Shown: positions 19,299-61,466, numbered from the stretch's first letter. The stretch: DNA of 64,000 nucleotides from Octopus sinensis (GCF_006345805.1 NC_043003.1:84010001-84074000), one strand, 5' to 3'. Program-made: numbers and translations. Notes: generated by a model from the letters alone, not told the origin.

Positions 19299-19461
19299 AA
19301 GGATGGTTCGTCCATGACTTTGCGACATTTGGTGACTCCATAGAGCAAACTGCCTGTTAAGCCGCCAAGTCCGAGTAGTAATATAATCCAAGCAATGAGG
19401 GACGCGCAGGGAACATGTGACAGACATGTTAAGAACTTGTCACAGCAGTTCTCTTTGCGGG
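19299..19461 (-). CDS. M6: Internal coding exon of a proteolipid protein (PLP/DM20/M6; neuronal membrane glycoprotein M6-like) family gene: Cys-rich N-terminal segment plus TM1
   Basis: Translation (x)RKENCCDKFLTCLSHVPCASLIAWIILLLGLGGLTGSLLYGVTKCRKVMDEPS matches the family pattern C..CC..CL..(I/V)P(Y/C)ASLIA..L...G (GPM6A: GCFECCIKCLGGIPYASLIATILLYAG). Acceptor ttttcgttgcag, donor gtatgt; 163 nt, phase 1 in / phase 2 out, as for PLP1 exon 2. The symbol is family-level only; orthology not established. Confidence 0.85.
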
Positions 19462-20362
19462 CTGCAACGAAAACCAGAAAATTATTGTTAATATTATGAT
19501 TAAATATTAATTTTACTTCATTAAAATTCACAATAATATTTTGATGATCAGATTTCGAAGAAAATTTCATATTTTTTTAAAAATGAGTCTTAAATAATTA
19601 CAATTTGAAGACGGTCAAAAACTCTCTATGACATGTGTATGTGTGCGTGTGTGCGCGCGCGAACACCGGAAAATGTCATTCTGTCCGTCTTCTTGGACCA
19701 CAGCCAGCGCTTGTAGGCCACACGATCATGTATGCTAGTACGAAGTTCAGAGTCCTGATTTTTTCCGATTGACTGTATGTGTGTGTGTGAAATTGGATTT
19801 TACTATTCTGAATGTAAAAGAAAATAAGATACTGCATGTTGAAATATTAGGGTCTCATATAGACTTAGTTTTAGAAGAGTAATGTGGAAGACAGTAAGTG
19901 TCCATGCATTTATTGAAAACATGAGCAACAGAAAGAAAATCTTTTTATAGAGAGAAACAAAAAAATATGAGTAAAAGCTGATGTTTTATGTTGTACGAAA
20001 GAATGAAATTTTTCGTGTATGATTTTCCGTAGAAGTATTACTGAAAGTTATGATTTAAGACTAGAAATTTTAAAAAGCAGAATGCATAAAACTGACAATT
20101 CTGGTTTGTTAGTATTGACGAAGATAACCAAATCGAACCGAGCCTCCTGATAATACTAAAAATGTTACAGTAACATCAGCCATCACAAAACTCATTGTAT
20201 GTAGAAAGCTGGAATCTATTCCATCTCAATCACAGATTTTTAAAAATTAATTTTTTGTTTTTTAATTAAACAGTTCGAAACTTTAAATACTGGTAGAATT
20301 TCTCACGTAGAACGCGGTTTACTCTGAACATTTTTGACAAAATTTCTTATTTTAGAAGTTAT

Positions 20363-21162
20363 TTCGTGTTAAAGTTGTATTTGGGTAATTTCAACCAATC
20401 AACGACGTGTATTCAGTTGAAACCTCCTGCTGTTTGCGATAGTAATCGAAGAGGAACAACTTCTGGCCCATGTCTACTAAATGTCACCACTCTATTCGAA
20501 GAATCAACACCATAGAGCAACAAATCCGCAGCTAGCTTTTTTGTTGTTGACGTGTATGTAGTTTCAAAATGGCTTATTTTACAACTATGAGATGTATTGT
20601 TATTGTTATGATTTTATCTTACTATAATCAACAACAATCACATTTCGTCAATATAAAAGTCTTTATTAGATAAAAAAATAACTTTATCAAAACATGAAGG
20701 TAAAACAAAACAAATAGCAGCTTATACACCGGAAAATACGGTAATTGTAGTGGCAGTGACAAGTTCGCTCGCTGGTTGCTAGTGTAGAAAGGAGGGGAAG
20801 AGTAAGGAATGCACGGTGCTGACTAGAAAGGATGAAGGTGACATCGTCTTCGCTCGCCGTACGAATAGAACAGAGTGGTGACGTTTAGTAGAGATGACCC
20901 GGATCATTCAATATTTTCCAGTAGAGTCCATTTTTCTTTCAGAAAGAAAAGTTTGACAATGACGTCAACGTTTTTGTTTCAGTTGCCTTCTTCAGACAAC
21001 AAAGATGAAATGAAATAACTGTTAATCTTTCTCACGTCTCTGTGTTGATGCCATAGGAAATTTTAGAAATTTTTGAGAGTGAAATGATTCTTTTTCAGGA
21101 TATCACGAAGCACACTTCGTTGATTGGTTGAAATTACCCAAATACGACAACTTTAACACGAA
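20363..21162. mobile_element. Region bounded by ~43-bp inverted repeats, probable DNA-transposon relic
   Basis: ttcgtgttaaagttgtatttgggtaatttcaaccaatcaacga versus its reverse complement at 21117-21162 (3-nt indel). Confidence 0.5.
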
Positions 21163-21816
21163 GTCATTAAACAATCTGTGTCTGAGATGGAATAGATCCA
21201 GAAAGCGGTTCTCGTTGATAATTATTAGACAATGCATTGCTGCACACATACACGCACACACAACTATAGCTACCCTTTATATTGATCGAGTTTTTTGCAG
21301 TTCAGTATTTTTTTTTTTCAAGTGGTGGATTTTCTGATAAATACTACAATTGAAAACTCTCTTCCAATCGCGCTGTTTGTCGTTTCGAAAGAAACGAAGA
21401 TATTTATACGCGAATAAATTACAATGAAATAAGTTTGCCGTAAGAAGACAAGAAATTTAAGGTTAGGAGCAGGGCACTTCGTTATTGCGAGATGAAATAC
21501 TATATGTAAACATCTAATCTCCCTTCGGTGAAGAGCCCTATCCGATAGCTTTCATTTCTCTTCTTCGCGACAAAACTTAATTTCTTTCCCTTTGCAAACT
21601 GATTCTTCTTAGTCACTCGTTCTTTTTTTTCAGATTCTATTTCAGTCTACAATTAAACCACTCCTTCCATGAAATTTTATTGATATTCATGTTTCAAATA
21701 TTCTATTGCCTAAAACGTTTTCAATTAAAGTAGTGTTATATTAATGTAGATGTTTTCGATCTAGTTTGGATTCTTTGGAATCAAATTTGATGGCAAGAAT
21801 CCAAACCAGATCGAAA

Positions 21817-21859
<43 letters not shown>

Positions 21860-21863
21860 TAAT

Positions 21864-22076
21864 TCGTTAGCACGCCGGGCGAAATGCTTAGCAGTATTTC
21901 ATCTGCCGTTACGTTCTGAGTTCGAATTCCGCCGAGGTCGACTTTGCCCTTCATCATTTCGGGGTCGATTAAATAAGTACCAGTTATGCACTGAGGTCGA
22001 TGTAATCGACTTAATCCCTTTGTATGTCCTTGTTTGTCCTCTCTATGTTTAGCTCCTCGTGGGCAATAAAGAAATA
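21864..22076 (+). mobile_element. SINE family A, slightly 5'-truncated
   Basis: cgttagcacgccgggcgaaatg...gggcaataaagaaata. Confidence 0.85.
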
Positions 22077-22096
22077 TATGTAATTAATAACAAACC

Positions 22097-22310
22097 GAGC
22101 TGGCTGGCTGGATCGTTAGCACACCAGAAAAAAAAATACTTAGCGGCATTTCGTCCGTCTACACGTTCCGAGTTCAAATTTCACCGTGGTCGACTTTGTC
22201 TTCATACTTTCGGGGTCGGTAAAATAAGTGCCAGTTGAGCTCAGGGGCCGATGTAATCGATTTACCCCAGCCCGAACTTATTGGCCTGTGCCAAAATTTG
22301 AAATCAATAT
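22097..22310 (+). mobile_element. SINE family A' (same head/core as A, different tail)
   Basis: gagctgg...gttcaaattt...gtcgactttg...aaaatttgaaatcaat. Confidence 0.75.
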
Positions 22311-23304
22311 ATGCAATTAATTACTTTACTGAAAAAAGCCTAACTTTGTATATTTCTCTCTCGTGATTCTTTCTTAACGAAAGGATCAGGAAGATTTTTC
22401 TCTCCCTCACCCTTATGTCGTTTCAAATGAATTCGTTTACTAATTTGTGGCCAAGTTGATGGATTATCCCTTGAGGAAAAAAATATATATACTTGAAGTT
22501 GAGCTATTAGAGGGAAAGATGATCTGAACTCGTACATACCGAAGCTATATAGTCAAATAATTAAAGAAGGCTTGGAAGATTAATCTGTTAAAAAATGTAC
22601 TAATTTCTGCCAGTAGAGCTGACCTAGCAGATAGGTGATAACCTAACTTTAACAAATAAGCTTTTTAATGCTGGATGTTGAAATATTAGATTGAAGACTG
22701 ATTTGAGCCAAATTCTGAAGCTAATATATTCCAAAGAAATCTTAGCAGACTCATCTATTTGAACATTTACCAAAATAATTAATTGCTTTCCTAGGCGGAA
22801 GTATATTTCTTTTCAGTGGAGATATGAAACTTCCTTTCAGGAAGGAAACAAAGAAACAAAACTGGAAGAAAAAAAAAACAAACAAACATAAAACCCTAAG
22901 TATTTGGAACTTCGATGTAATTGGGTCCATTAAATAAATAAATAAATAAATAAAAGTCTTGTCTCTATAGTTACAGCTGTGCACGCGTATTTCTATTCTG
23001 AACTCTAAATTAGCAAAGATTTTAATGTGAATGATATCAGATGTGAAAGCCACCAATTTGAGACAGTAAAAGATAAACAGGACTGGTAAAGTTTAAACCA
23101 TGTATCCATCGTTTGCCAGTCGATTATGTTATCGCTTATTACACTTCAAACAAATGTATCTGCCACTCAGCACTCTTCGCTTTTACAATTTCAGCTTTAT
23201 TCTTTTAACTCTACCATTTTAATTCATCAGTCACAAATTACTAGCAGTGTAGTTTATTCTACAAATGTCTCGAATTGCCAGGTGCGTCACACAAGTTCGA
23301 TATT

Positions 23305-23660
23305 TTCTTTTATTCGCTTATCTCAGTCATTGGACTGCAGCCATGCTGGGGCACCGCCTTGGAACCGCCTTGGAGGGTTTAGTTGAACGAATCGATCCCA
23401 GTACTTACTTTTAAGCGTGGCACTTATTCTGCCGGTTCTCTTTGCCGATCCGATAAGTTATGGGGACTTAAACCAATGCCGGTTATCAAACTGTGGTGGG
23501 ACACATAAACACACACACGCATACGCGACGGGCTTCTTTCAGTTTCTGTCTACCAGAGTATGGTTGGTCAGGGCTACAGAAGATACTTGCACAAGGTTTC
23601 ACGCAATGGGACTGAATCCTGATCCATGTGACTGGAAAGTAAACTTCTTGCCAGACGACC
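23305..23660 (-). mobile_element. SINE family B
   Basis: Reverse complement of head and tail blocks. Confidence 0.75.
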
Positions 23661-24611
23661 AATAATAATCCTTTACAGAAAAAATGTATCGTATTCAATG
23701 CTTTATAGAGTATAACTGCATTTCAGCAAAATGCTGTAAAAATTACATAATACTTGTGGAAATATATTATCTTGCACCTCACCTCATCAGTGTTCCGCAA
23801 TGAATACTATGACAGATGTTGAAAACACTAAATATATACCACACAAATCCATGCCACACAATATAGCAAGAGTAAAAAAAAAAAAACTACCATGGATGTA
23901 CGAACCTATTGATGATGAAGGTTGAGGAATAATTACCATCAACTCCTTCAAATTTATGGCGTTATCCTACTGTTATATATTTTAAGGTTTGCAGAGTGAA
24001 AAATAAAGGCAACAGCAAACCACCGCAAGAGGATTTGTTAGTGTTAGTGGTGGGTAGAAATATAAACTTTGAAATAAAATACGAGACACCCCGAGTTCAA
24101 TATTGTAGTACACAGTTCATAATATTAGTGTTTCTATCATATTCGTTGACCTTGATTATTATAACAGAACATGAAAATATCAAATTATCAAATTTGTAAG
24201 TGGATTTAAGAACGCGTGACATTCGAACAAGCAAGCAAAAAAGAGACACAGAGAGGAAAGTTCTTTCCCAAAAAACCCAGTTGTAGTTGTGGTGGTATCT
24301 TAAATTCAGAGGGGACGAAAGGGGTCTAAAAAAAGAAAACGACTAAAAGGAAGAAAATGTACGCATATCTGAATGATTAATATTAGAATTCACAAATTGG
24401 AAAACATCCACTCTGATTAATTAAAACATTTTCCGAAAAAAAAAAAAGAAAAAAAAAGAGAAAACCCCGAAACATAAAAATTACTTGTCACAAACAACAA
24501 AATAACAAGGAAAATGTATCCATAATCTTTTTAATCTCTAAAGTATGTGTAGTTTCGACGTTGTAGTTCTTTTTGATAACATTCTCAATATCCAAATGTC
24601 CTATGAATATA

Positions 24612-24795
24612 TTAAGCTGGTGGAACTGATAGCAGTTTCGTCCGCCTTTACGTTTTGAGTTCAAATACTGCCGAGGTCGACTTTGCTTTTTATCTTTTCG
24701 GGGTCGATAAAATAAGTACCAGTTGAGCACTGGGTCAATGTAATCGGCTTACACACCTCTGAAACTGCTGGCTTTGTGACAAAATTTGAAACCAG
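24612..24795 (+). mobile_element. SINE family A'
   Basis: B-box, core and gtgacaaaatttgaaacc tail. Confidence 0.75.
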
Positions 24796-26160: not shown

Positions 26161-26416
26161 AAAGGGTAAAGACCCCCTTCGGTCATGAGTGACCATGGGT
26201 TTGCACCTAGAGAGTTACCCTCTGAGGCACAAGTCTGGGCAAGGTTGTTTTATGGAAGACCAGTAGTCGCCCATGCATACCGGCCTCCCCTCTCCACGCC
26301 ACCAGTGTTATCCAAGGGAAAGACAAAGGTCGATACAGCTTGGCACCTGTGACGTCGCAACTCATTTCTACAGCTGAGTGAACTGGAGCAACGTGAAATA
26401 AAGTGTCTTGCTCAAG

Positions 26417-26420: not shown

Positions 26421-26448
<28 letters not shown>

Positions 26449-26451
<3 letters not shown>

Positions 26452-28025: not shown

Positions 28026-28055
28026 CCTGCTTGGTCGCATGTTCCCAGGGCCTTC
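28026..28055 (-). CDS. Candidate 30-nt symmetric micro-exon (phase 1-1, xRPWEHATKQx)
   Basis: cattttctatcag acceptor and gtaagt donor enclose 30 GC-rich nt; frame-preserving between 36680 and 19461. Confidence 0.4.
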
Positions 28056-30550: not shown

Positions 30551-31443
30551 CGTTATTTATTGTACACATAAAACAACGTAAGCTACTAGTCAATTCTTGC
30601 ACTCATAAAAATTGAAAACAAGTGAAGGTTATCCGAAACGTTTGTTGTACCATGAATTTTATCACTAAAAGAATCCGCAATAATGTAGAACCAGTGAGGA
30701 AGTCTCTACTGCTAAAAACAGCAACCAAATCTCAACCCCTCTTAACTGAGAATATTAATGTAATCTTAGCTCCACTATGCCCGACTAATAGACGAGATAG
30801 TCTAACAAGAATATCTTTGATCAAATATTTCCTGTTGAAGTACCACAGCAACAAAAAGTACACTTCATTTGATAAAATATCAGGAGGACCGTTCAGTTCA
30901 CTTTTTTCGGATGAGATCATCCAGGGTACATACATCTAACCCGCCCCCATAAAGTTTGCAATTAAATTCTACATTAATTCAATTAGCATAGCCAAGTGTC
31001 AGACTAATTAAACTGAATTAGCCATTCATATTCAAGTGTAACACAGAATTCACGGAAACACACTCACATACACATAAATACATTATTTGATAAATTTATT
31101 CAGATATACCCAATCCTTGTGGCTGAACACAGATAAAGAGAGAATTCCAAAAACAAAAATTAGAAGTAAATTTCATAATTCTTTCTACTTAGGCATAGCG
31201 CCAGAAATTTTTGGAGGAGGGGCTAGTCAATATCATCGACGTCATTGCTCAATTTGAACTCAGAGAATAAAGCCGGAAGAAATGTCGCTAAGCATTTTGT
31301 TCGGCGTATTAATTTTATAATAGCTTCTATATTAGTCACAAGGGGAAAAGTAAGAACAATACGTCTTTGTAGAAGAGAATTACCGGACGGTGGAATCGAA
31401 CTGGTAATGTCGTGGTTCTAAAACGAACTTCCATGTGCATAGA

Positions 31444-31790
31444 TGCAGGCGTGGCTGTGTGGTAAGAAGTTTGCTTCCCAACCACTTGGTTCCGGGTCCA
31501 AGTCCCACTGCGTAGCACCTTGGGCAAGTGTCTTCTGCTATAGCCTCGGGCCGACCAAAGCCCGTCGTGTGCGCGCGTGCGTGTATATCTGTGTGTGTGT
31601 ATCTGTGCGTGTGTGCCCCTTCACCGACGCTTGACAATCGATGTTGGTGTGCTTATGTCCCCGTAACTTAACGTTTCGACAAAAGAGACCAATAACATAA
31701 GTACCAGGCTTACAAAGTCCTGGGGTCGGACTTTTCGACGAAAACCGTTTAAGGCGGTGCTCCAGTCAAATGAAGAAGTAAAGGAATAAA
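31444..31790 (+). mobile_element. SINE family B
   Basis: Same head and tail blocks. Confidence 0.8.
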
Positions 31791-36679: not shown

Positions 36680-36764
36680 TGAGTTGCTTCATCGTCTGAT
36701 GACTCATCGACTCCTGCATTCGGAGACAGAGTACAGCAACATCCTCGGTACAGAAGTGTTTGCC
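36680..36764 (-). CDS. Candidate upstream exon of the PLP/M6-like gene (GKHFCTEDVAVLCLRMQESMSHQTMKQL)
   Basis: atatttag acceptor, consensus gtaagt donor, 85 nt, GC-richer than flanks. Phase 0 in / phase 1 out joins in frame to 19461 and contains in-frame ATGs. A second frame (QTLLYRGCCCTLSPNAGVDESSDDEAT) is also open but does not join 19461 directly. Confidence 0.5.
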
Positions 36765-38222: not shown

Positions 38223-38223
38223 C

Positions 38224-40790: not shown

Positions 40791-42939
40791 TTATAAGTTC
40801 TAACTCTGCTACAAGAACCGACACAATTATGAAGATAAATGAAAGCCTGTACTTGACTGTAATTTATTTTATCGACTCTGCAAGACTGAGTGAAGGGCCA
40901 AGTTAATCCATTAAACTCCGGGATTAAAACCGTTTAATTAATCTAATGGTTTTCTGATTATTACTATAGAAATAGAGACCGAATAAAAACGAACTAAATT
41001 GTTAAAATCTTTCAAGAAAGTCGTCGAAAGGAGTAGCAATTTCCTATACGAAAATCTTAAGTACTAAGAGATTGACTAACGAAAGGATTAATGGATTGAT
41101 TTGTAGACATATGATATGCCTGCGTATAGGTGGGGTCGGGGTTATTGTAGGAATCAACAGATAAAATAGTCTGAAAGTGAAAGCCTGTGTGAATTTATCG
41201 TCCGCTGTTATTTCTGATATAGTATAAGTGAAATTAAAAATAAATGAACGCTATATGATTCCATCAAACTGTCACATTTAAACTACATATTTCATTTTAA
41301 GAGAAATAATAACCAAACGCTAGTGGGGGAGAACTGCTTTCAGATTCAGGGCATTGCTGTCACTACACAAACTTCTTAGATTGTACAAAAAATAAATAAA
41401 TAAATAAATAAATAAGAGATATGACTGATTAGTATGAAGTCCCCTGTCATTACGTTCCAGACTCATTGTCTCTTCTGATTTTTCTGCAGCTACCACAGGG
41501 GCATTTGCTCTTCAGCACTCCGGCCCACCTGACTCGCGCGTCTCTTCTCGCCTACTCTTGTGTCCATTCGCACTAAACGCAATCCCATCACTAAAATGTG
41601 TGATTTTAATTCAAATTTCTTAACTTACTACATGGAACATGCTAGAGTTCACCCACATTACTTTTAACTTTATATGCAGCAGCCATTCTTAGTTCTTTGT
41701 TTTTTTTCCTCTCCCAGACAAATTTACAATTAAGTATGACTGGCTGACATTTACACAGAATAAACAAATGCCAGAAATAAAATTATTTCTCTAACTTCTT
41801 TGTGTTCAGATTTAACGAACACCTAAACTATTGCTAATTCCCAATTACAAATACAATATCCCAGATTTTTTTTCAACTATAATTATATTTTCCTGTGATC
41901 AAAGACCGAGAAAAAAAACCCAGAATACTACTTTCTTTTGGCGAGAACAATAAGGTTTTGCTGCTGTCGTTGCGAGGCTCAGTTCAATCCCGAGCTAGCC
42001 GATCATTGATCAAATATATATTAGCAACAGAGGCGGTATTTATACCGAGAATGTTTATCCCTACTTAAACGTGGATGTTCTATCAGAACAAACTTTTCTG
42101 CGGTCACTAATATATATTCAACAAACTGGCTAATAGCGACAGCAGTGTCTGTTCTGGTACTGTCAATTTATATATCGCTGGCGGGGAGATGAACTATTGC
42201 TGCTTCTAGGTCTAGTATCCATCATTGACAAGACCAAACAAGGTCGAAATCACGTCATCTGGTAGTCTTGGTGCTGGAAGTAGCAGGGTTTTATCTCCAA
42301 CTAGCGATATAAAGAAAGTGCATTTTGCAGCGAAAAGCCAGTATGAGAGTTTCTCTCATGGTAACTACCTCAGTAAATTTTGTTCTAATAGAACATTCAC
42401 ATTTGAGTGGGGATAAATATAACTCCTTTGATCAAATTTTTTTCAGTCACGCCTGTCTCGTGAACTATATTTGTCCAATGTACTATTACATTTTTTAAAT
42501 AAAAGAAACCCCTCTGTCGTGTGTGCATTGATGGATATTCGGTTGTTGTTTTTAGCAGAACGATCAATGATACAGAGGCTCTCTTGCTGGCTGGAGAAGC
42601 TTATATAAATCAAATGGATAATACAATAGTGGCTAACTGTTAATCCGAGGTACTTGATAGATATTTTGGGGTGGCGGGTTACAAAGAGCTAAATTTCAAA
42701 CAGTTGGCATTACATCTATCATCGGATGTAATGTTTACGTTATTAGGGCTCGGGTGCGCCAGCGGCCGATTCTCTCCATGGTCACACATCCTGCAAGAGA
42801 TAAGCTGCCAAAAATTTCGCAAATGAAGCCCTATCATTTTAAGTATAAAAATAACACATTGGACAATGTAGTGCTAGATATGTAAAAGGCAGGATGGTCA
42901 AAGCTGGAACGCCTTTGTAAATATGTACAACTTAATACC

Positions 42940-43169
42940 TATTTCTTTATTACCCACAAGGGGCTAAACACAGAGGGGACAAACAAGGACAGACATAGGT
43001 ATTAAGTCGATTACATCGACCCCAGTGCGTAACTGGTACTTAATTTATCGACCCCGAAAGGATGAAAGGCAAAGTCGACCTCGGCGGAATTTGAACTCAC
43101 AACGTAACGCAGACGAAATACCGCTAAGCATTTCGCCCGGCGTGCTAACGTTTCTGCCAGCTCGCCGCC
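42940..43169 (-). mobile_element. SINE family A, full length
   Basis: Near-identical to 2741-2972; TSD ttaatacc. Confidence 0.9.
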
Positions 43170-45774
43170 TTAATACCGTGTGGAGTTAATATGAACATCA
43201 GTTCTATCAAGTTCACAAATTGGAATGCGTTTGCTTCTTTTGCGTAGTGGTCAGATAGCACATGGCGCTTCCATTTCGTTGTTTATATGATTTGCCTTGT
43301 GGACAGCGAAACAAATATTTGTTTTACAGAATAATCATTTTTGTCTTATGCAAGCTGCCATCGTTGGCATCTTTATTGCATTATTTAATGATTCCTCTTT
43401 TTTCTCTTTATTTACTAATGGTACCTCTGGTAAACAGAGTTTACCAATGTGAAATCTTACCTACTTCATGAGTTTCTAAGATCTCTTAAGAACTCGTATA
43501 ATATTTCACTCCAGTATATGTTTGAAATATGATTATCTAGCTGTCTTGTATGTTCATATACCTATTTGAGATATAATATCTCAAAGTTCGTTAGCATGGC
43601 TGTTTTATTTATTTACTCATTTTTCTTTTGTAGAAATATGTTGGAGTGAATTCTCTTTCAATGCATGATGGTGATATCACAAACTCCTATTGGTTCATTT
43701 GTCAGTGTAATAAATTTGTTCAAATTTTAATTGGGTCGTATTCTCTCTCTAAAACCATATAAATTTATGTTGTTGAGTAAATTATTAGAGGTTTGCAATA
43801 TATGTTCACACATATTCACAATTCATTTCCACCCCCACCTTACATAATATCATCGCCACAAATGATAAGGCTTTTTCTAGTCAATTTACTTAATTCGTGC
43901 CTACAGCTTTACCACATTGGTTTTTACTCCCAGTATGCTCCTCCTCTCTTTCTTTCTCTCTCTCTCTCTCTCTCTCGCTCACGCGCGCGCGAAGAGGAAC
44001 CTTCAGTTGAAAAAGTAAATCTGCACCAACTACACGTTTTTGTGTCTTATCTTTCAACTTGAAGACCCTGCGGTTTTGAGGAAAGCAATTAACATTCCAG
44101 TTGTCAGCTGCACGATGGTGATAATGATGACGCCGACGGGAATAAATGTAATTTCTAACACAAGCCCAAGGGCACATATAATTAGGAAAAGGACCGTTAG
44201 TTATATCGATCCTTAATATTTCTCCAGGAACTTACTCCATCTACGCTGGTGTTATTTGAACTCATAGTAAAATGAGAAGGAAATATTCTGTTTTTCGCTT
44301 TTTGTATAATTCATTCACTGCTGAATTATCTACTGTGACTTATTTATTTTTAATGGCAGTAGAGTGATGAAGATTAGGCTGCTAATTTTAATTGTAGCTG
44401 CGGAAAGGTCGCTTCGAGTCATGAAGGCTTATTTTTGACAATACTTGTATGGATGGTACTTCGTCGTTTGATCAAACTATATAGGGCGTAGATCTGCTCA
44501 GTCAGGACTGACAGAGTTACATATACGACTGCGATATTAAAACAACAAATGAAATAGACTTGCTAGAAATATCAACCAGATCTCTTTCAAATTACATACT
44601 AGAGTTTTAAAAAATAAAATTAAAATAATAAAAAAGACATCTAACAATGTAGTACTGAACATATTAAAGGTATGAAAATGACTGGATGATCACGATAGGA
44701 ACATCTTTGCTGATAGATCTCTTCGCTTTTGACTGATCTTTGGGAACTTGTACTATAACAATAGAAATGTTTTGTAACTTTAAGGCATAGAAAACGAACA
44801 AGTTTAATCACGGAAATACCGAAACAACTACTTCATTACGCGTAATTCATGTCTGCAATTACACAAAACGAAACTATTATATTTCCAAACTAGTTACATT
44901 TCAATATTACATTTATTTCTGTTTCACAGAGCTATTTATAACACACTCATCATCATCGTCATAATCATAATCAGCAGTAGTAGTGGTGGCGATGATGATG
45001 ATGATAATAGTAATAATGATGATAATGGAAGTGGTGGGAGCAACAGCAGCTGTAACAGCACTCATCTGTTTTTACCATTCAGTTATACAGGAAGGAATTC
45101 TGGCCGAACGGAGTGATTCCCTTAACTCCGCTTTTCCAAGAAATTGTTGGCATTTAAAAATGATATTTTTTATTTATTCCTTTATTATTTTTTTTTTATT
45201 TCATTTCTTTTTTATTATCAGCTCAGCCGCATCTTCGTTGCTGCTTTTTTTTCAACCCTTGGCCAATAATATTTTGAGGCTAAATTGAAGGGGTATAGGA
45301 GAAAGAAGTTAACTTTTGATACAGACCGAAAGAAAAATATACACAAGATAGAAAGGAAAAACTTGTGGATGATAAAATAACTTAGATAGGATGTTTGGCA
45401 AATTGTCAGCTGATTCGAGTTTGATATCAACAGCAGTAACAATAATATTATCAGTAACAACAGCAGCTACATAAATGTACAGACATATTTTTCGGTGCTT
45501 GCCGAAAGATTTGCTTTTACATGGTGCTTGAGAAGGCAACGCATAGAAAAAGCCCTCTACATCAGATCTACTTCAATGGTGGCAAAGCCTTGTAAGTGTC
45601 GAAGACCGCGTTTTTGGATTCGCTGTGTATATATACATCACAAGTAATAATCTCAATTGATTTTATTCGGGGTACATATTACTGTAACGTTTTTATTTCA
45701 TTAGAACATTTAAATGCCAAAAAAAAAAAAAAAAAAGGTAGGAAGAGAGAAAAGAAAAGAAAGAAAACGACGAT

Positions 45775-46558: not shown

Positions 46559-46632
46559 CTGTTGCAAGCAACTGGCCCCGGTGTCTGGTCCGAACATAAT
46601 TTCATCCTTTCCTCCCATCGGCTCCGAATGTC
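46559..46632 (-). CDS. Candidate exon (xHSEPMGGKDEIMFGPDTGASCLQQ)
   Basis: ctgcag acceptor (weak pyrimidine tract), CAG|gtagaa donor, 74 nt, GC-rich patch. Phase 1 in / 0 out fits between 59003 and 36764. Confidence 0.3.
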
Positions 46633-46775: not shown

Positions 46776-48310
46776 CCATGTTGCATACGGATAGGTTTTC
46801 TTTTATAAGTGGACTCGCTGAGACAGAAGAGTCCCAGATCAATTCTGATCAAACATATTCGTGATCGAAATCGTTCCAGTCATGCTCGATCCACTTTTAT
46901 GTTTCTACAACCAATGGTCTACATCATCCGGTGCATTCGTCAAAGTAAAGACGGTAGCTCAGAATGTCAAACATGATTTGAACTCAAAACGTATTGTGCT
47001 TATTTTATATACGACAATGTCAACTGTCTTCCATCGTTTCGAGAATGTGGGAACGATAAGATAAAATAAGCACTAACACCGAAAACCGATTTAATGATTG
47101 TGCTTTTCCCTAAAATATGTCCTTCATGCATACGTCAGAATTTAATAAATACGTAGGTTCCCTTTGACATCAGACATGGTTAAAAATCAACTGAAGACGG
47201 CATCAAATAAATCTCGGATGTTTAGGGCGTTTTATGTCATTACGTAGAAAGGATTGGTCGCTAGACACTAGATACGGTTTCATTTTTACTTCTAATTTAG
47301 AAGCTAATTAAGTCAGTGACATCACGAGAAATTAGAGGATTTTCTATCATTTTTTTCCTATTCTATTCCATTCTGTTACCGATTTCAGCCATTTTTGCCT
47401 TTTATCTTTCCAGGGTCGATATAATCAATTGTGACCATTTCCCCAAACATCTGCCCCCGTGCCTATGTTAGAAATGATTTGATAGTAATAAAATGTGCAG
47501 GTATTTGGAAAAATTTAGCAATGGTGCTTGTATAAAAAAAAACATAGATGGCAGCTTTAATTTACTAGATATTTTAAAACAAGCGGTTTTATACGAAAAA
47601 CTGAGACGGTCTCAGAAGTGTAGAGTGATATAAAAAAGCTTATAAAAAAAGTTCTTTATTTTTTCTTTCTTTATATATTTTTTTGGCATGTGAATTAGAC
47701 ATAAGCTACTAACCTCGTTCCCCTTTGGGAGGCAAGCAGAGGTTGAGTAATAGACACATTTTACACTATGAAGACCAGTGTATTGTTTAGAATTGAACCG
47801 TTCGCTTCTATGGCCTGTTATTAATTACCTCAGAAGACGCAACACACGACCAGCTGGACTGTTCACTGCAGTCCTTTAAAAGAAGAGACAGAAAAGAGCG
47901 GATATGAATAGAAAGAGATGATAGATAGATAGATTGATAGACAGACAGATATGAAAGATAAATAGATAATCATTTTACGTCTGGTCTTATCTATATGAAG
48001 GCGCGTGGCCTAGCTGTTGGGTTCGCGATCGGTATGTCGAAGGTTCGATTCTCCGACGGGGCAGTGCGTTGCATCCTTTAGCAAAGTACTTCATTTCACG
48101 CTGTTTCCGTCCACTCAGCTAGAAATTAGTACCACCAGTAGATGGTGGAAATTGACATCCGTTCGGAAATACTACTACTACTACTACTATTACTCATGCT
48201 CTTAACATGTCTAGTGACATAAAATGAAAATTATACTGCAATATATATTTCAAACTAGTCACGATAAGCTCTGACCTACCTGTTGGCCTTTGGGCTCGTG
48301 ACAGACTTAT

Positions 48311-48657
48311 GATTAGATCGACACCAGTACGCAACTGGTACTTAATTTATCGACCTCGAAAGGATGAAAGGCAAAGTCGACCTCGGCGGAATCTGAAATC
48401 AAAAACGTAGCGGCAGACGAAATACCTATTTCTTTACTACCCACAAGGGGCTAAATACAGGGAGGACAAACAAGGACAGACAAACGGATTAAGTCGATTA
48501 CATCGACCCCAGTACGTAACTGGTACTTAATTTATCGACCCCGAAAGGATGAAAGGCAAAGTCGACCTCGGCGGAATTTGAACTCAGAACGTAACGGCAG
48601 ACGAAATACCGCTACGCATTTCGCCCGGCGTGCTAACGTTTCTGCCAGCTCGCTGCC
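48311..48657 (-). mobile_element. SINE family A head-to-tail dimer (one full copy plus one internal segment)
   Basis: Two tandem copies joined at gacgaaatacc|tatttc (48426/48427). Confidence 0.85.
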
Positions 48658-50576
48658 TTTTTAATAAAATCATTATCAGATTCAATAAGATGTTTAATCT
48701 TTTCACTTTTGATATTTATTAAATTTCCAATTTTTGGATTTGTTCTATTGAGGTTTAGACAATTTTAGTTCGGGGATATAATCCAATTTTTTAATTGGGT
48801 CGAGGTAACAAATTGTTTAGTCTTAAAAAGTACCAAATTGCACCAAATTGTTTAGTCTTAGGTCAGCTTTGATTGAGACTACATATGATCAAAGGCATTT
48901 AACCAACCGTGACTATCCTATACCTTTCCCCCAGAAACGGTGCATCCAGGAGTCCATCATCTAGTATGTTCTTTTCTTGGGCGGTAAGTTTAGTTCACAC
49001 CCACACATTTGTGTATGTACATGGGTAAATAGGGCATCTCTACAACTCCATCAGAGGTTGAGGACCCAAGCATACAACACACACACACACGTGTGTGTGT
49101 AACTATGCGGTGTTTGTATGAACGAGTTTGTTTAATCTGCGCATCCACAGTATACACTTCCATTTTCGTCTTCATATCTGTGGGAAGTGGTGGGGTCCAC
49201 AGTGCGGGTTAATTTCATAAGCCTATTAAAATAATGTTCTCCCTTTTGCACCCTCTCACCGCTATGACTTGATTAAAATCCAGTATTTTCTTCTATTTTC
49301 AGTTGTCACGGTACAACGAATTTTAAAGACATACGGAATTTTAATAGTTTTCTAAGACACTTGATGAAAAATGCTGCCCACAATGTTATTTCTGTTAAGG
49401 GCCATTTGATATTTTCCTGAGAATAGCTATGGGAAAATTGTTAACTCAAAACACAGTTTCATAACCGCGCGGATTATATACAGTTCAGGCTATTTCAAAA
49501 GCAGTTGAACAGCATTCTCTCGGGAAAACATCAGTGAACAAAGACTTTTTAATGTAGTTTATTTCACTGCGAGATAGCTGTGTTGCCGGACGTATCTTTT
49601 GGGTTATCTTGGCATACATGTATAGCTGTTACTCGCAAGCGAGTATGGTTTAGTAGCAAGGACCACACGTTCACTTGTTTTAGCTTGCCTGTGTAGTCGC
49701 GAGCAGGCGTAGACCTAATATCTTCTCATTGTTGGCACAACGGAACATTGATGGGTGCGACAGCTGATAGGAATAGAGAACTAAGCCAGTAAATAGGCTG
49801 GTACTCAATTTCCGCTAAGAAGATTAGAGCAACGTGAACTAAAGTTCTTTGCTCAAAGACACAATGCACCAAGTCAAAACTTGAACGTACAATCTTATGA
49901 TAACGAGACCAACTTCCTAACCATAGGGCCACACGCCTTCATACGCGTAAAAGATTATCTTACCGATGCAGTTTTTACATCAGTAAGATAACCTGAAGGA
50001 GATCTTGTTCTTCGATATATCACCCCCAAAAGTTGTTGAACCTTTATAAAAGTCAAGTGAAATCCACAAGATAATACTGTTCACAAATCTGAGACAGTAC
50101 CAGTTCTCTACATACGGATAACTTAGATTTCGTAAAAAAACCTCCAACAAATTAAGGCTAGATTTCACAAATAAAACTTAACCTAATTAACCCATTATTT
50201 TGTTGTTTTTACATCCATCACCTACTTTTGGTCACCCCATTATCACCCCACTTTTCTTTAACGCCCCATCCACCCCTGGATCTTTCCACTGCCCCCAGGG
50301 GAACCACTGCACTACAACCTCTAGCCCACAGACGTAATCTCCCATCTCCTGGCTTTTCTACTGCTACTCTATCGGTCTATATTCCTGAGCATTAGTTGCA
50401 CGCTAATATCCACCCAAGCTACCCGACATCCCTCCTTCTCCTCTCATCCCTATACGGTCTCCCCTTCCGTAACCCTCTCACTAATCACTGTCAACATTTC
50501 TCTCTGCACGGCAGGGTTAACCCGCTGGAATCGCATAGGTTTTTCCCTGTAGTAATTGACTTCAAATGTTCTAGGC

Positions 50577-51018: not shown

Positions 51019-51070
<52 letters not shown>

Positions 51071-55469: not shown

Positions 55470-55640
55470 CAATTTTAGAACAGGGTTAAGTCAATTACAT
55501 CAACCCCAGCGCTCAATGAGTATTTAATTTCATCGACCCGAAAGGGGGAAAAGCAAAATCGACTTCGGCGGAATTTGAACTTAGCGCCATTTCTTCCAGC
55601 TTCATGTCCTAAGTATTTTGTCTAGGGTGCTAACGATTAT
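55470..55640 (-). mobile_element. SINE A'
   Basis: Core and B-box. Confidence 0.65.
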
Positions 55641-55942
55641 ACAAGTACGACAACTTGCATTATAGTAAAAAGGTATATGTATGTATTACCTTTGACAAAA
55701 CGACTGGAATACTTTTCATTGATCCCGCCGAAAGAGATCAGAATAAAACGACTTAATTCACGACTGAATTTCGGCTTAAAATTGAATTTCACCTCTTTGA
55801 TTTCATGTCACCGGAAAACGTGTGTAAAGCACACCATTGCATTTCCCTAGTTCTGAGAACGTGTGCTTATGGAAGACATTATCGGTGGCATCTCAGCAGC
55901 TGCATTTACCAATTTGTATGTATACACACACACACATATATA

Positions 55943-55986
<44 letters not shown>

Positions 55987-56549
55987 GCATAGACGCACAC
56001 ACGTGTGTGTATATATATAATAGAAATAGGTTTCAAAGAGAAGACACTACACGTGGTATAAATAGGGGAAAAGAAAAGAGAAAATGCACATTGAATATAA
56101 AAAAAAATAAAGGCTTCTTTATAAAAAGTAACGATATATATAAATACAATTAGATGAACTGAGGTAGAATTGAGAGGTATAAAAGTCATTATTATGAATT
56201 GTTAAAGACTATAATTGTGTCTATATGTATAGACACACATATTGACACCACACACACCCAGACATATGACACCTACACACACATATCCTCTTTTATATTT
56301 GCAGAATTAAGTAGAGGAAAAGGAAGAATTTCGTGATATCACATTAAATATAGAGTAGATTCGTAAGTTCTTTTTATTTATCTAATGAAAACAACCGAAT
56401 ACGAAGCTGAAGTCGATGTGACTGACTTGTTAGTGTGGAAGAATTAGAATGTGAAAGAAAATCAGCTGTGTGGGGTGTTATAGTAGAAGCCTGTGATTTT
56501 CTGGGGAAAGTAGCATGACATACCACACGGCTTTCAAAAGAATCCCATG

Positions 56550-56583
<34 letters not shown>

Positions 56584-56861
56584 AAACTTTTTATTTCCAG
56601 TTTTCTCTGTTATAATATGAAACAGCACGGCCAGGGACCATAAAGTTTAGTATAAAACAAATAGAGAACAGGACATTTTTTTTGAGGAAGAAAAACAAAA
56701 AAATACTAATAAATAAAATTTAAAAAATCATTTGTTCATAAACAATATTAGGAGTTTGAAATTACAACCCAAATTGCTAAATCTATATACATATTCAAGG
56801 GTTATAGCCACAGAGTTGCTATAGATCAATGCTTTACAAGCTGGCTGAGTGGTAGGAAGTT

Positions 56862-57060
56862 GCAGGCGTGGCTGTCTGGTAATAAGTTTGCTTCCCAACC
56901 ACATGGAACTGAGTTCAGTCCCACTGCGTGGCATCTTGGGCAAATGTCTTCTACTATAAACTTGAGTCGGCCAAAGCCATGTTAGTGGGTTTAGTAGACG
57001 GAAACTGAGAAAAAAGCTCGTCGTGTGTGTGTGGCAGAGTGTGTTCCCGCCACCACTTTA
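56862..57060 (+). mobile_element. SINE family B, 5' half
   Basis: Head through gacggaaactgag. Confidence 0.75.
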
Positions 57061-57099
57061 TGGATATTATCTATTCTTTGTGAAAGTGACGAGCTCATT

Positions 57100-57285
57100 A
57101 ACACGCCGGGCAAAGAGCTTAGCGGTATTTCTTCTGTCTTCATGTTCTGAGCTCAAATTCCTTCGACTTTGCTTTTCATCTTTTCGGCGTCGATGATAGT
57201 ACCAGTCGAGTACTGGGGTCAATGTAACTGACTATCCCTTCCCCCTAAAAATCCAGGCCTTGTGTCTATAGTAGAAAGGATAAGT
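57100..57285 (+). mobile_element. SINE A'
   Basis: Head, shortened core and gccttgtgtctatagtagaaagg tail. Confidence 0.7.
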
Positions 57286-58427
57286 GATTCTTTGTATAGG
57301 CAAGAAGTTGCAATTGGCTGTCCCGAGAGAGAGGGCGAGGATGTTTGAGCTTGTAAGTTCCTATCTTTACCGACAACATTGCCACAGCGACGAAAGTACG
57401 ACATATGACTGGAAGGATTTTTCTATGTAAACGTTCGTATCTTTACTAGCATTGCTTTGGTCCAGTCTATTTAATCGTTGAGGGAAGTACAACTTACCGC
57501 TGTGACGAAATAAGAGCGTTGTAAAAACGATATGTGTCAAGCTGGTATGGTAAAACCAAGCTTATTTCCAATGTTGTTTCATACACAATGACTTGGACCG
57601 ACAATGTTTCATTGACACATTTGTTAAGAGAGGAAAATATAAGCCTTTTTGGCTCTCTTCACGCTTTAGAGGCAGTGAAGTTAATTTCTAAGCCATCTTC
57701 CAACTACAAGCCTACATCAATCTATATTTCATTCAAATCTTTCCTTTCGACATCCATTATGTAGCTCATTTCTTTTTGTTTTATTTATTTATAATGAGAA
57801 GGAAGGTGATATTTATATTTGGGAATTGTTTTGCAAGGCATCTGGAGCCAATTAGACGGCCCCTTTCTTAAACTCACTCTCACCCACCCAACAAAAAAAT
57901 AGAAATACGATACTTGAGGATGTTGTTTGGGAATATTCAAGATAAAGAAGTTGGAATAAAGCATTCTCTTGAGTAAGCCTTGTAAGGCATAATATATCGT
58001 TAAATGTGTGTGTGTGTGTGTGTGAAGAGGGGGGTGGGGTGGAAAATGCCCCAGCATGGTCACTGCCCTCATCTAAAACCAGTAAAAGATAAATATACAT
58101 ACATAAATATAAGCGTTAACATGAGATCTTAAATATAGGGTGTAGCTTGATTTCATTTCAGCTGTTATTTCTAGCAAGTCAATCAACCGCGCGGGGTTTC
58201 CTTTATTTGTTGTAAAACCCCGGGTTCGATCAGTGTCGTTGATGATGGAAAGCATTCAAATTGGGCCCACCCCGCCTTCAAATTCTGCATTATACAATAG
58301 TCATTTCCTTTTCCAAACGTTAGAGTGTAATTTGAGGGAGTGGTGCGACTTCTATTTCTAGAATTTCGAAGAACAGCAGAGACTTCCTCAGTGGTGTATG
58401 TAAACAAATTAAAGGGAACAACTATAC

Positions 58428-58463
<36 letters not shown>

Positions 58464-59002
58464 TGTGTGCTTTTACACATGAGGTTACCAAAACATAGAT
58501 ATTGTTTGTTACTTAGCGTGTACAACTTGCTCGTCTAAGTAACCCCACTTATACACATACGAGCAAATGAGTGTTTATATATATTTGTATGTGTCTAAGT
58601 GTACATAAGAGTGTAGGAAAATGTATATACTTATGTTTGTTTACATGTCTTTATATACAATGTATGTATACAGTGAGCGTGCGTATGTGCGGGGTACATA
58701 TCTGTTCTTGACATCAAATCAATCCACAGTGATGACATGAGGGTCGATTTGTAATTGGTTTAGTTTATTAAGAAAAGCAATGCACTGACATATTTCCTTA
58801 ACATACACACAGCAAGGAACAGATGCATGGTTCGAGTACCAACAGAGCCAAGGTATTTTGTTGTAAATAGTACTTAAAGGTTATATATATATTTAATTAA
58901 AACTTATCTGTTAATTTATCTAATACTCTAAGAGGAAGAATGGATAACTTCATGACACTTTCCAGAGTCTCCGTGATAAGTGGGATGATGGCTGGGACTT
59001 AC

Positions 59003-59050
59003 CCTCAGAGGAGAGATCAACCTCAAAACCTTTGGATATAATGGGCTCCG
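59003..59050 (-). CDS. Candidate 48-nt symmetric exon (phase 1-1, xEPIISKGFEVDLSSEx)
   Basis: Strong acceptor ttcttactttttag and consensus donor G|gtaagt; length divisible by 3; open in the phase-1 frame. Confidence 0.45.
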
Positions 59051-59337
59051 CTAAAAAGTAAGAACCAGATGTTGGCAGTAAAATGGGCGACGGATTGAAA
59101 TCACCGTGTACGTCCCAAGAACAAAAGTAGTCTGGACGGGCTTCTGTAATTTCTGTCAACATAATTTTACTAACAAGGCTTTGGTCAACCCGAACTTATA
59201 GAAGACCTTTTTCAAGCACCGAGCAGTGAGAACTTCTCAACCATACAATCATGTCTGGTATATATGTTCTGTGTATGTGCGTGATGATATGTGTATACGC
59301 GTGTCTTTAAGCCAGTGCTTCATGTGTGCCTTTAAAC

Positions 59338-59698
59338 CAGTGTTCCGCAACCTTTTTTCAATTGCGGCACACACATTCTTTCCAAATGTCGGCGGCGCAC
59401 CTGAACTAAAAATATGGCTAAAAGTATAGGGGGAAAAAATGGTAATACTTAAATACAGAGGCATCTTAACGGTACTACTTAAATACAGGTGTTACGTACA
59501 AAACATTTTCAATGTACGCTGTGTGGACGTGTAATGACACCCTAGCCCTAAAACTAACCCTAAAAACTAAGTCTCTTTCATATCGTTACGTAGATGCATC
59601 GGGACCTCTGCATTTAAGTAGTGCCAAAAAAAAAAATTGTATTCAGTATCGTCTCGTGGCACACCAGTGTGCCGGGGAATACTGGTTGCGGAGCACTG
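59338..59698. mobile_element. hAT-type MITE
   Basis: TIR cagtgttccgcaacc / ggttgcggagcactg (14/15); degenerate 8-bp TSD ctttaaac/atttaagc. Confidence 0.7.
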
Positions 59699-61423
59699 AT
59701 TTAAGCGTGTATCATTGTCAGTGCATATATAGATAGGTAGGGGTGTGCGAGAATGCAAGCTGACAAGTGTATGTGGTTTGAACTACCTGTTATTTGAGTT
59801 TACGAGTTGAAATTGGCTGCAAATAGCTCGTTACATTTTTGGGGCCATAACAATTGTCTTCATACATAGAACAGTCTGAAATAGGGAGCGGATTATCTTT
59901 CGTTCAACTGAATGGTGCAAAACTGTTTTCTTATCTTCATTCTATACAACGGGTGCTAAGTTCTGAAATTCCTTTCGGTGCTTAGAAAGCATTCACGCGT
60001 GTGTTGTGTGAATTTAATTTATCCGTTTTTGTAGGAAATCCTTAGAATGAGTTTAATTTTCTAGTTATCAAAAAGGGAGGGCGAGAGAGAAAGAGAGAGG
60101 TTCATTTAGCCATGTAATTCAAGCTTAAAAGCAACTCCTAAAAAGTACTGCAAACAGAATATTTAATGCAACAATTTATTTTTTTGGGCGGCTTCACGTC
60201 TGGATTTCGTAAGTTACATACAAACTGAGAATATTGAATGTTAGAAATAACATTATTTTGTTTAAATCTAGTGTCCTGTAAAGATATGGCTATCATATAT
60301 TGTAATAAATAAATAAAAAGAAAGGATTTCTGATAAAGGTACACGGCAATATGCATTATGTCAGAGAAGTCGATTACATCGACCCCAGTTCTTCACAAGT
60401 ACCTATGTTATTGATCTATGCGTAGGTGGAAAGGGACCTAATTGACTCAGTGGTGTGAACTGAACTCGGAAAAAGTAGTGGAACAAACATTTTGGTCGGG
60501 TTTTTCGAAAAAATATTTACTTGTATTCTATTAATGTTCTGAGTTCGAATTTCGTCACGGTCCACTTAACCCATCTTATTTTTAACCTCTATAAGTTATG
60601 TCTGAAATTTGGGAAACACAAAACCAAAGAGAAATTAGTTAGAGGGATTGGACAGCCTTTCCTGTTTTGGGGTGATAGACCGAATCCTTCATCTGGTTTA
60701 ATACCTTAGCATCCTTGGGTGTAATTTAGTGGAGTCTATTCTGTTGCAGCTATTCGGATCAAGTCTTCAGTTTAAGGAAGACACTGAGCCCTTTCCCACA
60801 TTAGTCTGCAAGGACCTCACAGGCGTTACCTTTTCTCCCCTGTTTAAACTACACAAAATATATCGAACGTGTACTCGTCATTTTAGTAGTTACACTGATT
60901 AAAAGGTTATGTAAATCTCCTCCTCACCCCCTACCGTGTTTATGTGCCTTGTACTTTTGTAAGAATCATATTTTGCCACGAAAGACAAAACAAAACGACA
61001 ATTCTAACAATACAACATACATTGTATTGAATTTCTCACCATTATAACACACATATCAATACAAGTCACGTGTATATTTAACAACAAAAAGTTGGCACTT
61101 TATGTATGTATGTATGTATATATATATATATATGAAATAAGCATAACTCCTGGAAACTAAATGAAAATAAAAATAAAATAGTAATTATAACTGTTTAGAA
61201 ACATTTAAATATGAACGTACATGTATAATCTTAATATCTGATACACACATACACAAAAGCTTACATATATACAATAAAACCAGATACACGAATCTGTTGC
61301 AGTATGATGTGAAAATTAGAAAAAATAAAACCTCCCAACAAACACAGTTATAGTACCCTGCACTAATACTACTAATAGTGCGTGCATAATATATATATAT
61401 ATATGGGTGCGATAAATACTGAC

Positions 61424-61466
61424 CTCCAGGGCTTTTCGATTCGCAGCAACAACAACAACACGTCAT
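61424..61466 (-). CDS. Candidate first coding segment MTCCCCCCESKSPG(x)
   Basis: ATG followed by six Cys codons, then GAG|gtcagt donor in phase 1, the phase required by downstream exons. The Cys run derives from a (TGT)n repeat and could be chance. Confidence 0.35.

What the first reader, a model, noticed from the sequence alone, without database searches (positions are those of the whole stretch)
19299..61466. Divergent PLP/M6 proteolipid gene with a hypothetical long, micro-exon-built N-terminal extension
Seen: one PLP/M6-type exon plus five small GC-richer segments with canonical splice sites, all on the - strand. Their phases (out 1; 1-1; 1-0; 0-1; 1-1; in 1) chain without a stop into MTCCCCCCESKSPG-AEPIISKGFEVDLSSE-GHSEPMGGKDEIMFGPDTGASCLQQ-GKHFCTEDVAVLCLRMQESMSHQTMKQL-RRPWEHATKQ-ARKENCCDKFLTCLSHVPCASLIAW. 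Known: vertebrate PLP/DM20/GPM6 and Drosophila M6 are 4-TM proteolipids with palmitoylated N-terminal cysteines and alternative N-termini. Inference: a modular, roughly 90-aa cytoplasmic extension spread over 42 kb, in an animal group without compact myelin, would be an unusual version of this family. I picked the segments by eye, so selection bias is real.
Basis: partly seen in the sequence, partly recalled or inferred. Interest (0 to 1): 0.7.

Follow-up and report, generated by a model that had tools for sequence, protein, structure and literature searches.

The report
Octopus M6 proteolipid gene, 5' end

Summary
Two are real. Exon 19299-19461 (-) is 100% identical to the shared second coding exon of Octopus sinensis LOC115214044, O. 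bimaculoides LOC106874846 and the O. vulgaris "membrane glycoprotein M6-a-like" protein. These full-length proteins hit Pfam Myelin_PLP at E=1e-21. Segment 61424-61466 (MTCCCCCCESKSPG) is an annotated alternative first coding exon, but it splices directly to 19461 (XP_029638940.1 / CAI9725980.1, 248 aa). A second annotated first exon, MCLLLNLCLPPKGER, lies at 47714-47759 and also splices directly. The four internal segments occur in none of the 14 Octopus sequences read (12 distinct), nor in a transcript from a more distant cephalopod. Ten in-frame isoforms built from them are absent from a 15-billion-protein collection. An open, phase-consistent chain is not evidence: about 64,000 exist on the real strand and 32,000-88,000 on control strands. 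The gene does have a modular N-terminus of up to 57 residues, but it is built from other exons, which are not in the window and must lie beyond its 64000 end. Variable N-termini are usual for invertebrate M6. Verdict: a known gene, low interest.

The parts
19299..19461 (-). Shared second coding exon of the Octopus M6-a-like proteolipid gene (phase 1 in, phase 2 out). It encodes (A)RKENCCDKFLTCLSHVPCASLIAWIILLLGLGGLTGSLLYGVTKCRKVMDEPS(F): the juxtamembrane Cys cluster and the first transmembrane segment.
   Evidence: Sequence and splice sites. Pfam Myelin_PLP 23.3 bits on its own. 100% identity to every listed isoform of O. sinensis LOC115214044, O. bimaculoides LOC106874846 and the O. vulgaris protein. 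67-69% identity to gastropod and bivalve M6-like proteins.
61424..61466 (-). Coding part of an alternative first exon, ATG..G|gtcagt, encoding MTCCCCCCESKSPG. In the annotated isoform it splices directly to 19461, over an intron of 41,962 nt.
   Evidence: Exact match to the N-terminus of P0060 (XP_029638940.1 O. sinensis X9; CAI9725980.1 O. vulgaris). Exon 1 plus the shared exon plus the rest of the protein translates to P0060 exactly.
47714..47759 (-). Coding part of a second alternative first exon, aaaATG..CGAG|gttagt, encoding MCLLLNLCLPPKGER. It also splices directly to 19461.
   Evidence: Exact match to the N-terminus of P0061 (XP_029638939.1 O. sinensis X8). Sequence context. Donor score 7.7.
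59003..59050 (-). Not part of the gene model; most likely a chance open AG..GT segment inside intron 1. Splice-site scores are strong (acceptor 7.5, donor 10.4).
   Evidence: Absent from all Octopus isoforms read. Hypothetical isoforms containing it are not in the collection. Segments this strong are as frequent on control strands.
46559..46632 (-). Not supported. Splice-site scores are weak (3.4 and 5.0). It keeps the frame only if segment 4 is included as well.
36680..36764 (-). Not supported. Splice-site scores are weak (3.6 and 5.0).
28026..28055 (-). Not supported. It is 30 nt, open in all three frames, with strong splice-site scores (6.8 and 10.4).
1..19298 (-). Start of the intron that follows the shared exon. 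The next coding exon (WWFMEFTVIGVV...) is not in the window, so this intron is longer than 19.3 kb.
   Evidence: tblastn of 17 M6-like proteins and of P0052 finds only the single exon. An exact-peptide search finds no downstream exon. The O. vulgaris gene spans 327 kb.

Best explanation
The window is the first ~61 kb of an Octopus gene for a four-transmembrane M6/proteolipid protein. The gene is annotated in O. sinensis as LOC115214044, in O. bimaculoides as LOC106874846, and in O. vulgaris as 'membrane glycoprotein M6-a-like'.

Shown: all isoforms share the exon at 19299-19461, which encodes the juxtamembrane cysteine cluster (NCCDKFLTC) and the first transmembrane segment. Short alternative first exons, some combined with cassette exons, are spliced onto it in phase 1 and give different N-termini. 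Two of these first exons lie in the window, at 61424-61466 (MTCCCCCCESKSPG) and 47714-47759 (MCLLLNLCLPPKGER). Both join 19461 directly, across introns of 42 kb and 28 kb.

Inferred: the several start exons probably reflect alternative promoters. By analogy with Drosophila M6 and mouse GPM6a, the shared cysteine cluster is probably S-palmitoylated, and the six extra cysteines of the MTCCCCCC isoform would add further acylation sites that change membrane-domain targeting.
For: The three window exons match annotated Octopus isoforms exactly, and the direct-splice product equals P0060 residue for residue.

The full-length proteins hit Pfam Myelin_PLP at 78 bits, E=1.1e-21, across profile positions 3-229 of 231. 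They have four hydrophobic segments.

An exhaustive search with the exon finds only molluscan and brachiopod M6-like proteins at 35-69% identity. Read-through ORFs from other, unnamed relatives start and end the exon at the same place.

The O. vulgaris gene spans 327 kb, which fits the long introns seen here.

Chain counts are 64,000 on the real strand and 32,000-88,000 on controls. There is no excess of GC-rich or strong-site segments on the real strand.

A transcript from a more distant cephalopod (P0052, loci L001/L002; 78% nucleotide identity in the exon) has an unrelated 41-residue N-terminus.

Palmitoylation of the conserved cluster in Drosophila M6 and GPM6a is reported in PMC11698045.
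Against: I had no RNA reads and no second octopus genome, so rare inclusion of any of the segments is not excluded.

Only 15 of the 37 members of the Octopus protein cluster could be listed. O. sinensis isoforms X1, X6 and X7 and several O. bimaculoides isoforms were not seen.

The RefSeq isoforms are computational models whose read support I could not inspect.

The word-index protein search missed known positives, so its negative result for the extension is weak.
Confidence: 0.9

Rival explanations
1. One reading: all four segments are constitutive exons of the MTCC transcript. The result would be a 327-residue protein with 94 residues before the RKENCC motif.
For: The chain is open and phase-consistent with canonical AG/GT. 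Two of the segments have strong splice-site scores. Other molluscan M6-like proteins have N-terminal regions of 44-175 residues.
Against: The annotated MTCC isoform in two Octopus species joins exon 1 directly to 19461. The 327-residue product is not in the 15-billion-protein collection. About 64,000 equivalent chains exist, and controls give as many. The proposed peptide contains hydrophobic, Cys-rich stretches (for example FCTEDVAVLCLRM), unlike the hydrophilic annotated extensions. It has no similarity to the N-terminus of any relative.
Confidence: 0.02
2. One or two of the frame-preserving segments with strong sites (59003-59050, 48 nt; 28026-28055, 30 nt) are genuine cassette micro-exons that are rarely included or tissue-restricted, and annotation has missed them.
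For: Acceptor/donor scores of 7.5/10.4 and 6.8/10.4 are as good as or better than those of the annotated exons. Both lengths are multiples of three and both are in phase 1-1. The gene does use small cassettes elsewhere in its N-terminal region.
Against: Segments with a summed splice score of 17 or more are about as frequent on the control strands (4 against 2-3). Isoforms containing them are not in the collection. I could obtain no conservation or expression evidence.
Confidence: 0.06
3. The window holds a paralogue or a processed or duplicated fragment of the M6 gene, not the annotated locus.
For: Only three short coding pieces fall in the window, and I could not name the species of the window.
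Against: Three separate exons spread over 42 kb, in the right order and on the right strand, are each 100% identical to annotated isoforms and have intact splice sites. The long-intron layout fits the 327-kb gene.
Confidence: 0.02

Closest known systems
Octopus sinensis LOC115214044 (XP_029638933-42), O. bimaculoides LOC106874846, O. vulgaris CAI9725980.1 'membrane glycoprotein M6-a-like'
   Same: The three coding pieces in the window match these proteins residue for residue. It is the same gene, or its orthologue in a sister Octopus species.
   Different: No difference found. I could not tell which of the three species the window comes from. Both in-window first exons match isoforms listed for O. 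sinensis.
Drosophila M6 (the single fly PLP-family gene)
   Same: A four-transmembrane proteolipid. A conserved juxtamembrane cluster of three cysteines sits in the part common to all isoforms. Six isoforms differ only in the N-terminal cytoplasmic domain through isoform-specific 5' exons (PMC11698045).
   Different: The cysteine spacing differs: CCx5C here against the CCxxC recalled for the fly (own knowledge, not tested). The octopus gene is far larger (327 kb). One octopus isoform adds a run of six cysteines at the very N-terminus.
Vertebrate PLP1/DM20, GPM6A and GPM6B (Pfam PF01275 Myelin_PLP)
   Same: The same Pfam family over the whole domain and four transmembrane segments. N-terminal cysteines are palmitoylated in GPM6a (cited in PMC11698045). 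From my own knowledge, a phase-1 intron a few codons before the CC motif, as at PLP1 exon 1/2, and alternative N-termini in GPM6B.
   Different: A distant relative: the exon alone scores only 23 bits. The C-terminus ends in ...NSKHSILDTNM, a motif shared by lophotrochozoan M6-like proteins. There is no link to compact myelin.
Other molluscan M6-like proteins (Magallana gigas XP_034300382 and at least 10 further isoforms, Babylonia areolata LOC143283645 X1-X4, Littorina, Haliotis, Elysia, Physella)
   Same: 63-74% identity in the shared exon (best local alignments). Many length isoforms per gene. N-terminal regions of 44-175 residues, acidic or proline-rich.
   Different: The N-terminal sequences themselves are not conserved with octopus. 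The gastropod motif 'ADSNNSIPPPPPP' has no - strand counterpart in the window.

Membership tests
PLP/DM20/M6 proteolipids (Pfam PF01275 Myelin_PLP) | Profile match above Pfam's gathering score | tested here: met
   The exon peptide alone scores 23.3 bits against a cut-off of 23.8, which is borderline. The full-length Octopus protein containing this exon at 100% identity scores 78.1 bits, E=1.1e-21, over profile positions 3-229 of 231.
PLP/DM20/M6 proteolipids (Pfam PF01275 Myelin_PLP) | Four transmembrane segments with cytoplasmic N- and C-termini | tested here: met
   A Kyte-Doolittle scan of P0060 gives four hydrophobic segments (about residues 33-56, 70-96, 118-150 and 188-215). Only the first is encoded in the window. 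Orientation in the membrane was not tested.
PLP/DM20/M6 proteolipids (Pfam PF01275 Myelin_PLP) | Cluster of cysteines in the N-terminal juxtamembrane region (S-palmitoylation sites) | tested here: met
   NCCDKFLTC lies directly before the first transmembrane segment. The matching columns are conserved in the 15-sequence alignment. Palmitoylation itself cannot be tested with these tools; it has been shown for fly M6 and mouse GPM6a (PMC11698045).
PLP/DM20/M6 proteolipids (Pfam PF01275 Myelin_PLP) | Conserved exon structure: a phase-1 intron a few codons before the CC motif | tested here: inconclusive
   The window has phase 1 at 19461. Genomic read-through ORFs from other, unnamed relatives start and stop the exon at the same residues (P0003, P0005, P0007, P0009, P0011). 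The comparison with vertebrate PLP1 exon 1/2 rests on my own knowledge and was not tested here.
Octopus LOC115214044 / LOC106874846 (the same gene) | Exact identity of several exons, in the right order and on the right strand | tested here: met
   Three coding pieces, at 61424-61466, 47714-47759 and 19299-19461, are each 100% identical to annotated isoforms.
   They are absent from the 14 Octopus sequences read (12 distinct) and from the transcript of a more distant cephalopod. Ten in-frame combinations are not in the 15-billion-protein collection. The 148-residue chain matched a database protein only through the shared exon (weak test).
   No RNA-seq data and no second octopus genome were available. 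The O. vulgaris locus was too long to fetch.

The most novel reading that the evidence does not exclude
At least one of the frame-preserving segments with strong splice sites (59003-59050 or 28026-28055) is a genuine cassette micro-exon, rarely used or restricted to certain cell types. It would lengthen the cytoplasmic N-terminus of the cysteine-rich MTCCCCCC isoform, and current Octopus annotation has missed it.
Probability: 0.05. Interest if true: 0.3.

Novelty: already known. Interest (0 to 1): 0.1.

Why it matters
It matters little for biology. The gene and its alternative N-termini are already in RefSeq for two Octopus species and in the deposited O. vulgaris annotation. Variable N-termini are the rule for invertebrate M6.

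The case is useful as a calibration. In 40+ kb of AT-rich intron, tens of thousands of open, phase-consistent chains with canonical splice sites can be assembled, so such a chain carries no weight without conservation or junction reads.

One detail might deserve a bench look. The annotated isoform beginning MTCCCCCC has nine cysteines in its first 30 residues. That would be an unusually dense palmitoylation module for this family, and I found no paper on cephalopod M6.

Tried and rejected
1. The search for homologous proteins with the 55-residue exon found nothing. With the 148-residue chain it found only one bivalve protein, through the shared exon. The word index missed P0052 and its cluster, which hold the exon almost identically, so I treat these negatives as weak.

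I searched with the exon alone instead.

3. A codon-usage log-odds test, trained on the CDS of cephalopod transcript L001, had no power.

4. The segments are not repeat copies. None recurs in the window and none overlaps the dispersed repeats, so 'they are transposon pieces' is not shown either.

5. No CpG island or promoter signal marks the region upstream of 61466. The higher GC at 62-64 kb is C-rich low-complexity sequence on the + strand.

6. A weak + strand match at 62643-62717 to the gastropod 'SIPPPPPP' motif, and another at 63828-63860 to 'SGYQLTSTYVR', are on the wrong strand. I rejected both as chance or low complexity.

7. Read-through ORFs of the window (19259-19570 and 61185-61466) are not on record, so the species could not be named that way.

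8. The O. vulgaris locus DNA could not be fetched because the gene range is 327 kb.

9. No relative has a solved structure in the PDB.

10. A literature search found nothing on cephalopod M6.
Full report
**The observation.** On the - strand the sequence reads ttcgttgcag|CCCGCAAAGAGAACTGCTGT...GAACCATCCTT|gtatgtat. The exon therefore runs 19299-19461, enters in phase 1 and leaves in phase 2. Each is bounded by AG and GT (the first starts at an ATG), and the joined sequence translates without a stop into the peptide quoted.

**Is the chain more than chance?** I scored splice sites with generic metazoan donor and acceptor matrices, recalled from general knowledge, against the window's base composition.

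| Sequence searched (window 19462-64000) | Open AG..GT segments, 30-85 nt | Chains of ATG exon + 4 internal exons into 19461 |
|---|---|---|
| - strand (real) | 41 | about 64,000 |
| + strand (control) | 47 | about 32,000 |
| reversed - strand (control) | 53 | about 88,000 |

One search added a fourth control sequence, the reversed + strand. Segments with GC >= 0.48 number 15 on the real strand and 8-15 on the controls. Segments with a summed splice score of 17 or more number 4 on the real strand and 2-3 on the controls. An open, phase-consistent, GC-richer chain is what this amount of sequence yields regardless of genes.

**What the exon is.** The exon peptide alone scores Pfam Myelin_PLP E=6.4e-5, 23.3 bits, just below the gathering score of 23.8, over profile positions 3-45. 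An exhaustive HMMER search of 1.84 billion representative proteins gave 17 hits at 35-69% identity. All ten hits whose source I looked up are either M6/PLP-like proteins of molluscs and a brachiopod or unnamed sequences (Logan assemblies, MetaClust). The named ones come from Babylonia areolata, Magallana gigas, Littorina saxatilis, Liolophura sinensis, Elysia crispata, Physella acuta and Lingula anatina. Several hits are genomic read-through ORFs in which the exon starts and stops at the same residues as here (P0003, P0005, P0007, P0009, P0011).

A profile search with an alignment of these proteins (A1) found P0052, which is 94% identical to the exon. Its 90%-identity cluster holds these annotated Octopus proteins:

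- O. sinensis LOC115214044, isoforms X2-X5 and X8-X11
- O. bimaculoides LOC106874846, isoforms X2-X4, X8, X11 and X12
- O. vulgaris CAI9725980.1, 'membrane glycoprotein M6-a-like isoform X4'

All of them contain the window's exon at 100% identity. Full-length P0060 scores Myelin_PLP 78.1 bits, E=1.1e-21, over profile positions 3-229 of 231 and has four hydrophobic segments. Family membership is therefore solid, and the gene is already annotated.

**The real N-termini.** These are the regions before RKENCC in the isoforms read. A vertical bar marks the join to the shared exon; hyphens mark joins between modules.

| N-terminal sequence | Isoform length | Note |
|---|---|---|
| MTCCCCCCESKSPG\|A | 248 aa | first exon is in the window |
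| MCLLLNLCLPPKGER\|A | 249 aa | first exon is in the window |
| MVSSYQVNP\|P | 243 aa | |
| MRQ\|A | 237 aa | |
| MVSNWNFQQTS\|A | 245 aa | O. bimaculoides |
| MSN(D/N)EENTE-DVTENGLYERTYKSSKDS-GKSSSGYQLTSTYVRPRLTADGGSGHADS\|A and its subsets | 254, 261, 265, 283, 290 aa | modular series |

The gene does have a modular N-terminus, but it reaches at most 57 residues before RKENCC and is made of other pieces.

An exact-peptide search of the window places only three coding pieces, all on the - strand: 19301-19459, 61425-61466 and 47715-47759. Translating 61424-61466 plus 19299-19461 and adding the rest of the protein reproduces P0060 exactly.

The other annotated modules have no match in the window, even at low stringency. 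They must lie beyond coordinate 64000. No downstream exon is present either. This fits the 327-kb span of the O. vulgaris gene.

**Direct tests of the four internal segments.**

- They are in none of the 14 Octopus sequences read.
- A transcript from a more distant cephalopod (L001/L002, from runs SRR25114243 and SRR19578112; 78% nucleotide identity in the exon) has an unrelated 41-residue N-terminus.
- I built the ten in-frame isoforms that combine either in-window first exon with the segments and looked them up by exact sequence among about 15 billion proteins. None is there, whereas both direct-splice isoforms are.
- The 148-residue chain matched a database protein only through the shared exon. 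This is a weak test, because the word index also missed known positives.
- The segments are not repeat copies, so I cannot assign them another origin. They are simply unremarkable intron sequence by every measure available.
- A codon-usage test had no power.

**What remains untested.** I had no RNA reads and no second octopus genome, and only 15 of the 37 cluster members could be listed. Rare inclusion of 59003-59050 or 28026-28055, the two frame-preserving segments with strong sites, cannot be excluded. I put it at about 5%.

**How it most likely works.** Shown: one shared exon carries the cysteine cluster and the first transmembrane segment, and several alternative 5' exons are spliced onto it in phase 1 across very long introns. 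Inferred: the different start exons reflect alternative promoters. Also inferred, by analogy with Drosophila M6 and mouse GPM6a, is the role of the cysteines. In those proteins the conserved juxtamembrane cysteines are S-palmitoylated, and in the fly this promotes localisation and partner binding (PMC11698045). NCCDKFLTC is likely acylated in the same way. The MTCCCCCC isoform would add six more candidate acylation sites.

**Comparison and novelty.** This is the annotated Octopus M6-like gene, a member of Pfam PF01275. Variable N-terminal cytoplasmic domains from isoform-specific 5' exons are documented in Drosophila (six isoforms, PMC11698045). They are also evident in annotation for oyster (at least ten length isoforms), Babylonia (four) and other molluscs, with 44-175 residues before the cysteine cluster. 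Novelty: already known. Interest: low. No paper on cephalopod M6 turned up, so the hexa-cysteine isoform is annotated but apparently unstudied.

Noticed in passing
An open AG..GT segment with good splice scores lies just upstream at 47829-47873; it could be a 5'UTR exon or nothing.
   Followed up: partly
window 61424-61466 (-): The annotated isoform starting here has six consecutive cysteines, encoded by (TGT)4(TGC)2. Together with the shared cluster that makes nine Cys in the first 30 residues, resembling a cysteine string. The codon run looks like an expanded trinucleotide repeat. No literature on it was found.
   Followed up: partly
window 18577-19137 (-): An ORF of 171-186 residues (…LLYGSETWTLSKKLERRLDGTYTRLLMRA…), about 160 nt downstream of the shared exon's donor site. 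From my own knowledge it resembles the C-terminal part of a LINE-type reverse transcriptase. The only Pfam hit is a sub-threshold match to DUF6451 (E=1.8e-4). Probably a retrotransposon remnant in the intron.
   Followed up: partly
It is either a recent duplication or an assembly artefact.
   Followed up: no
window 13009-13291 (+) and 16501-16784 (inverted): An inverted pair of 284-nt repeats at 95% identity, 3.2 kb apart. These could be two copies of a mobile element or the ends of one.
   Followed up: no
window ~236-460, 1141-1369, 3182-3413; ~2716-2981 with at least 15 copies (e.g. 42914-43170, 48422-48666, 21864-22076); ~14916-15319, 17047-17438, 1552-1726, 56858-57033, 31441-31765: Several families of short dispersed repeats of 130-400 nt at 70-91% identity, on both strands. 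They look like SINEs and fill much of the introns.
   Followed up: no
window 8160-8830: A long imperfect minisatellite rich in TG/TA (translating as YVYACLCMY...), which is open in several frames and produces spurious ORFs of about 190-220 residues. (TA)n microsatellites are scattered through the window.
   Followed up: no
window 62500-63300 (+): A C-rich low-complexity stretch (GC 0.44, GC skew -0.25) that translates on the + strand as proline and threonine runs. It gives weak chance matches to the proline-rich N-termini of gastropod M6 proteins, but on the wrong strand.
   Followed up: partly
Homologous-protein tool: The word-index protein search missed cluster representative P0052, although it shares 46 consecutive identical residues with the query. 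Negative results for short queries in this tool should not be trusted.
   Followed up: yes
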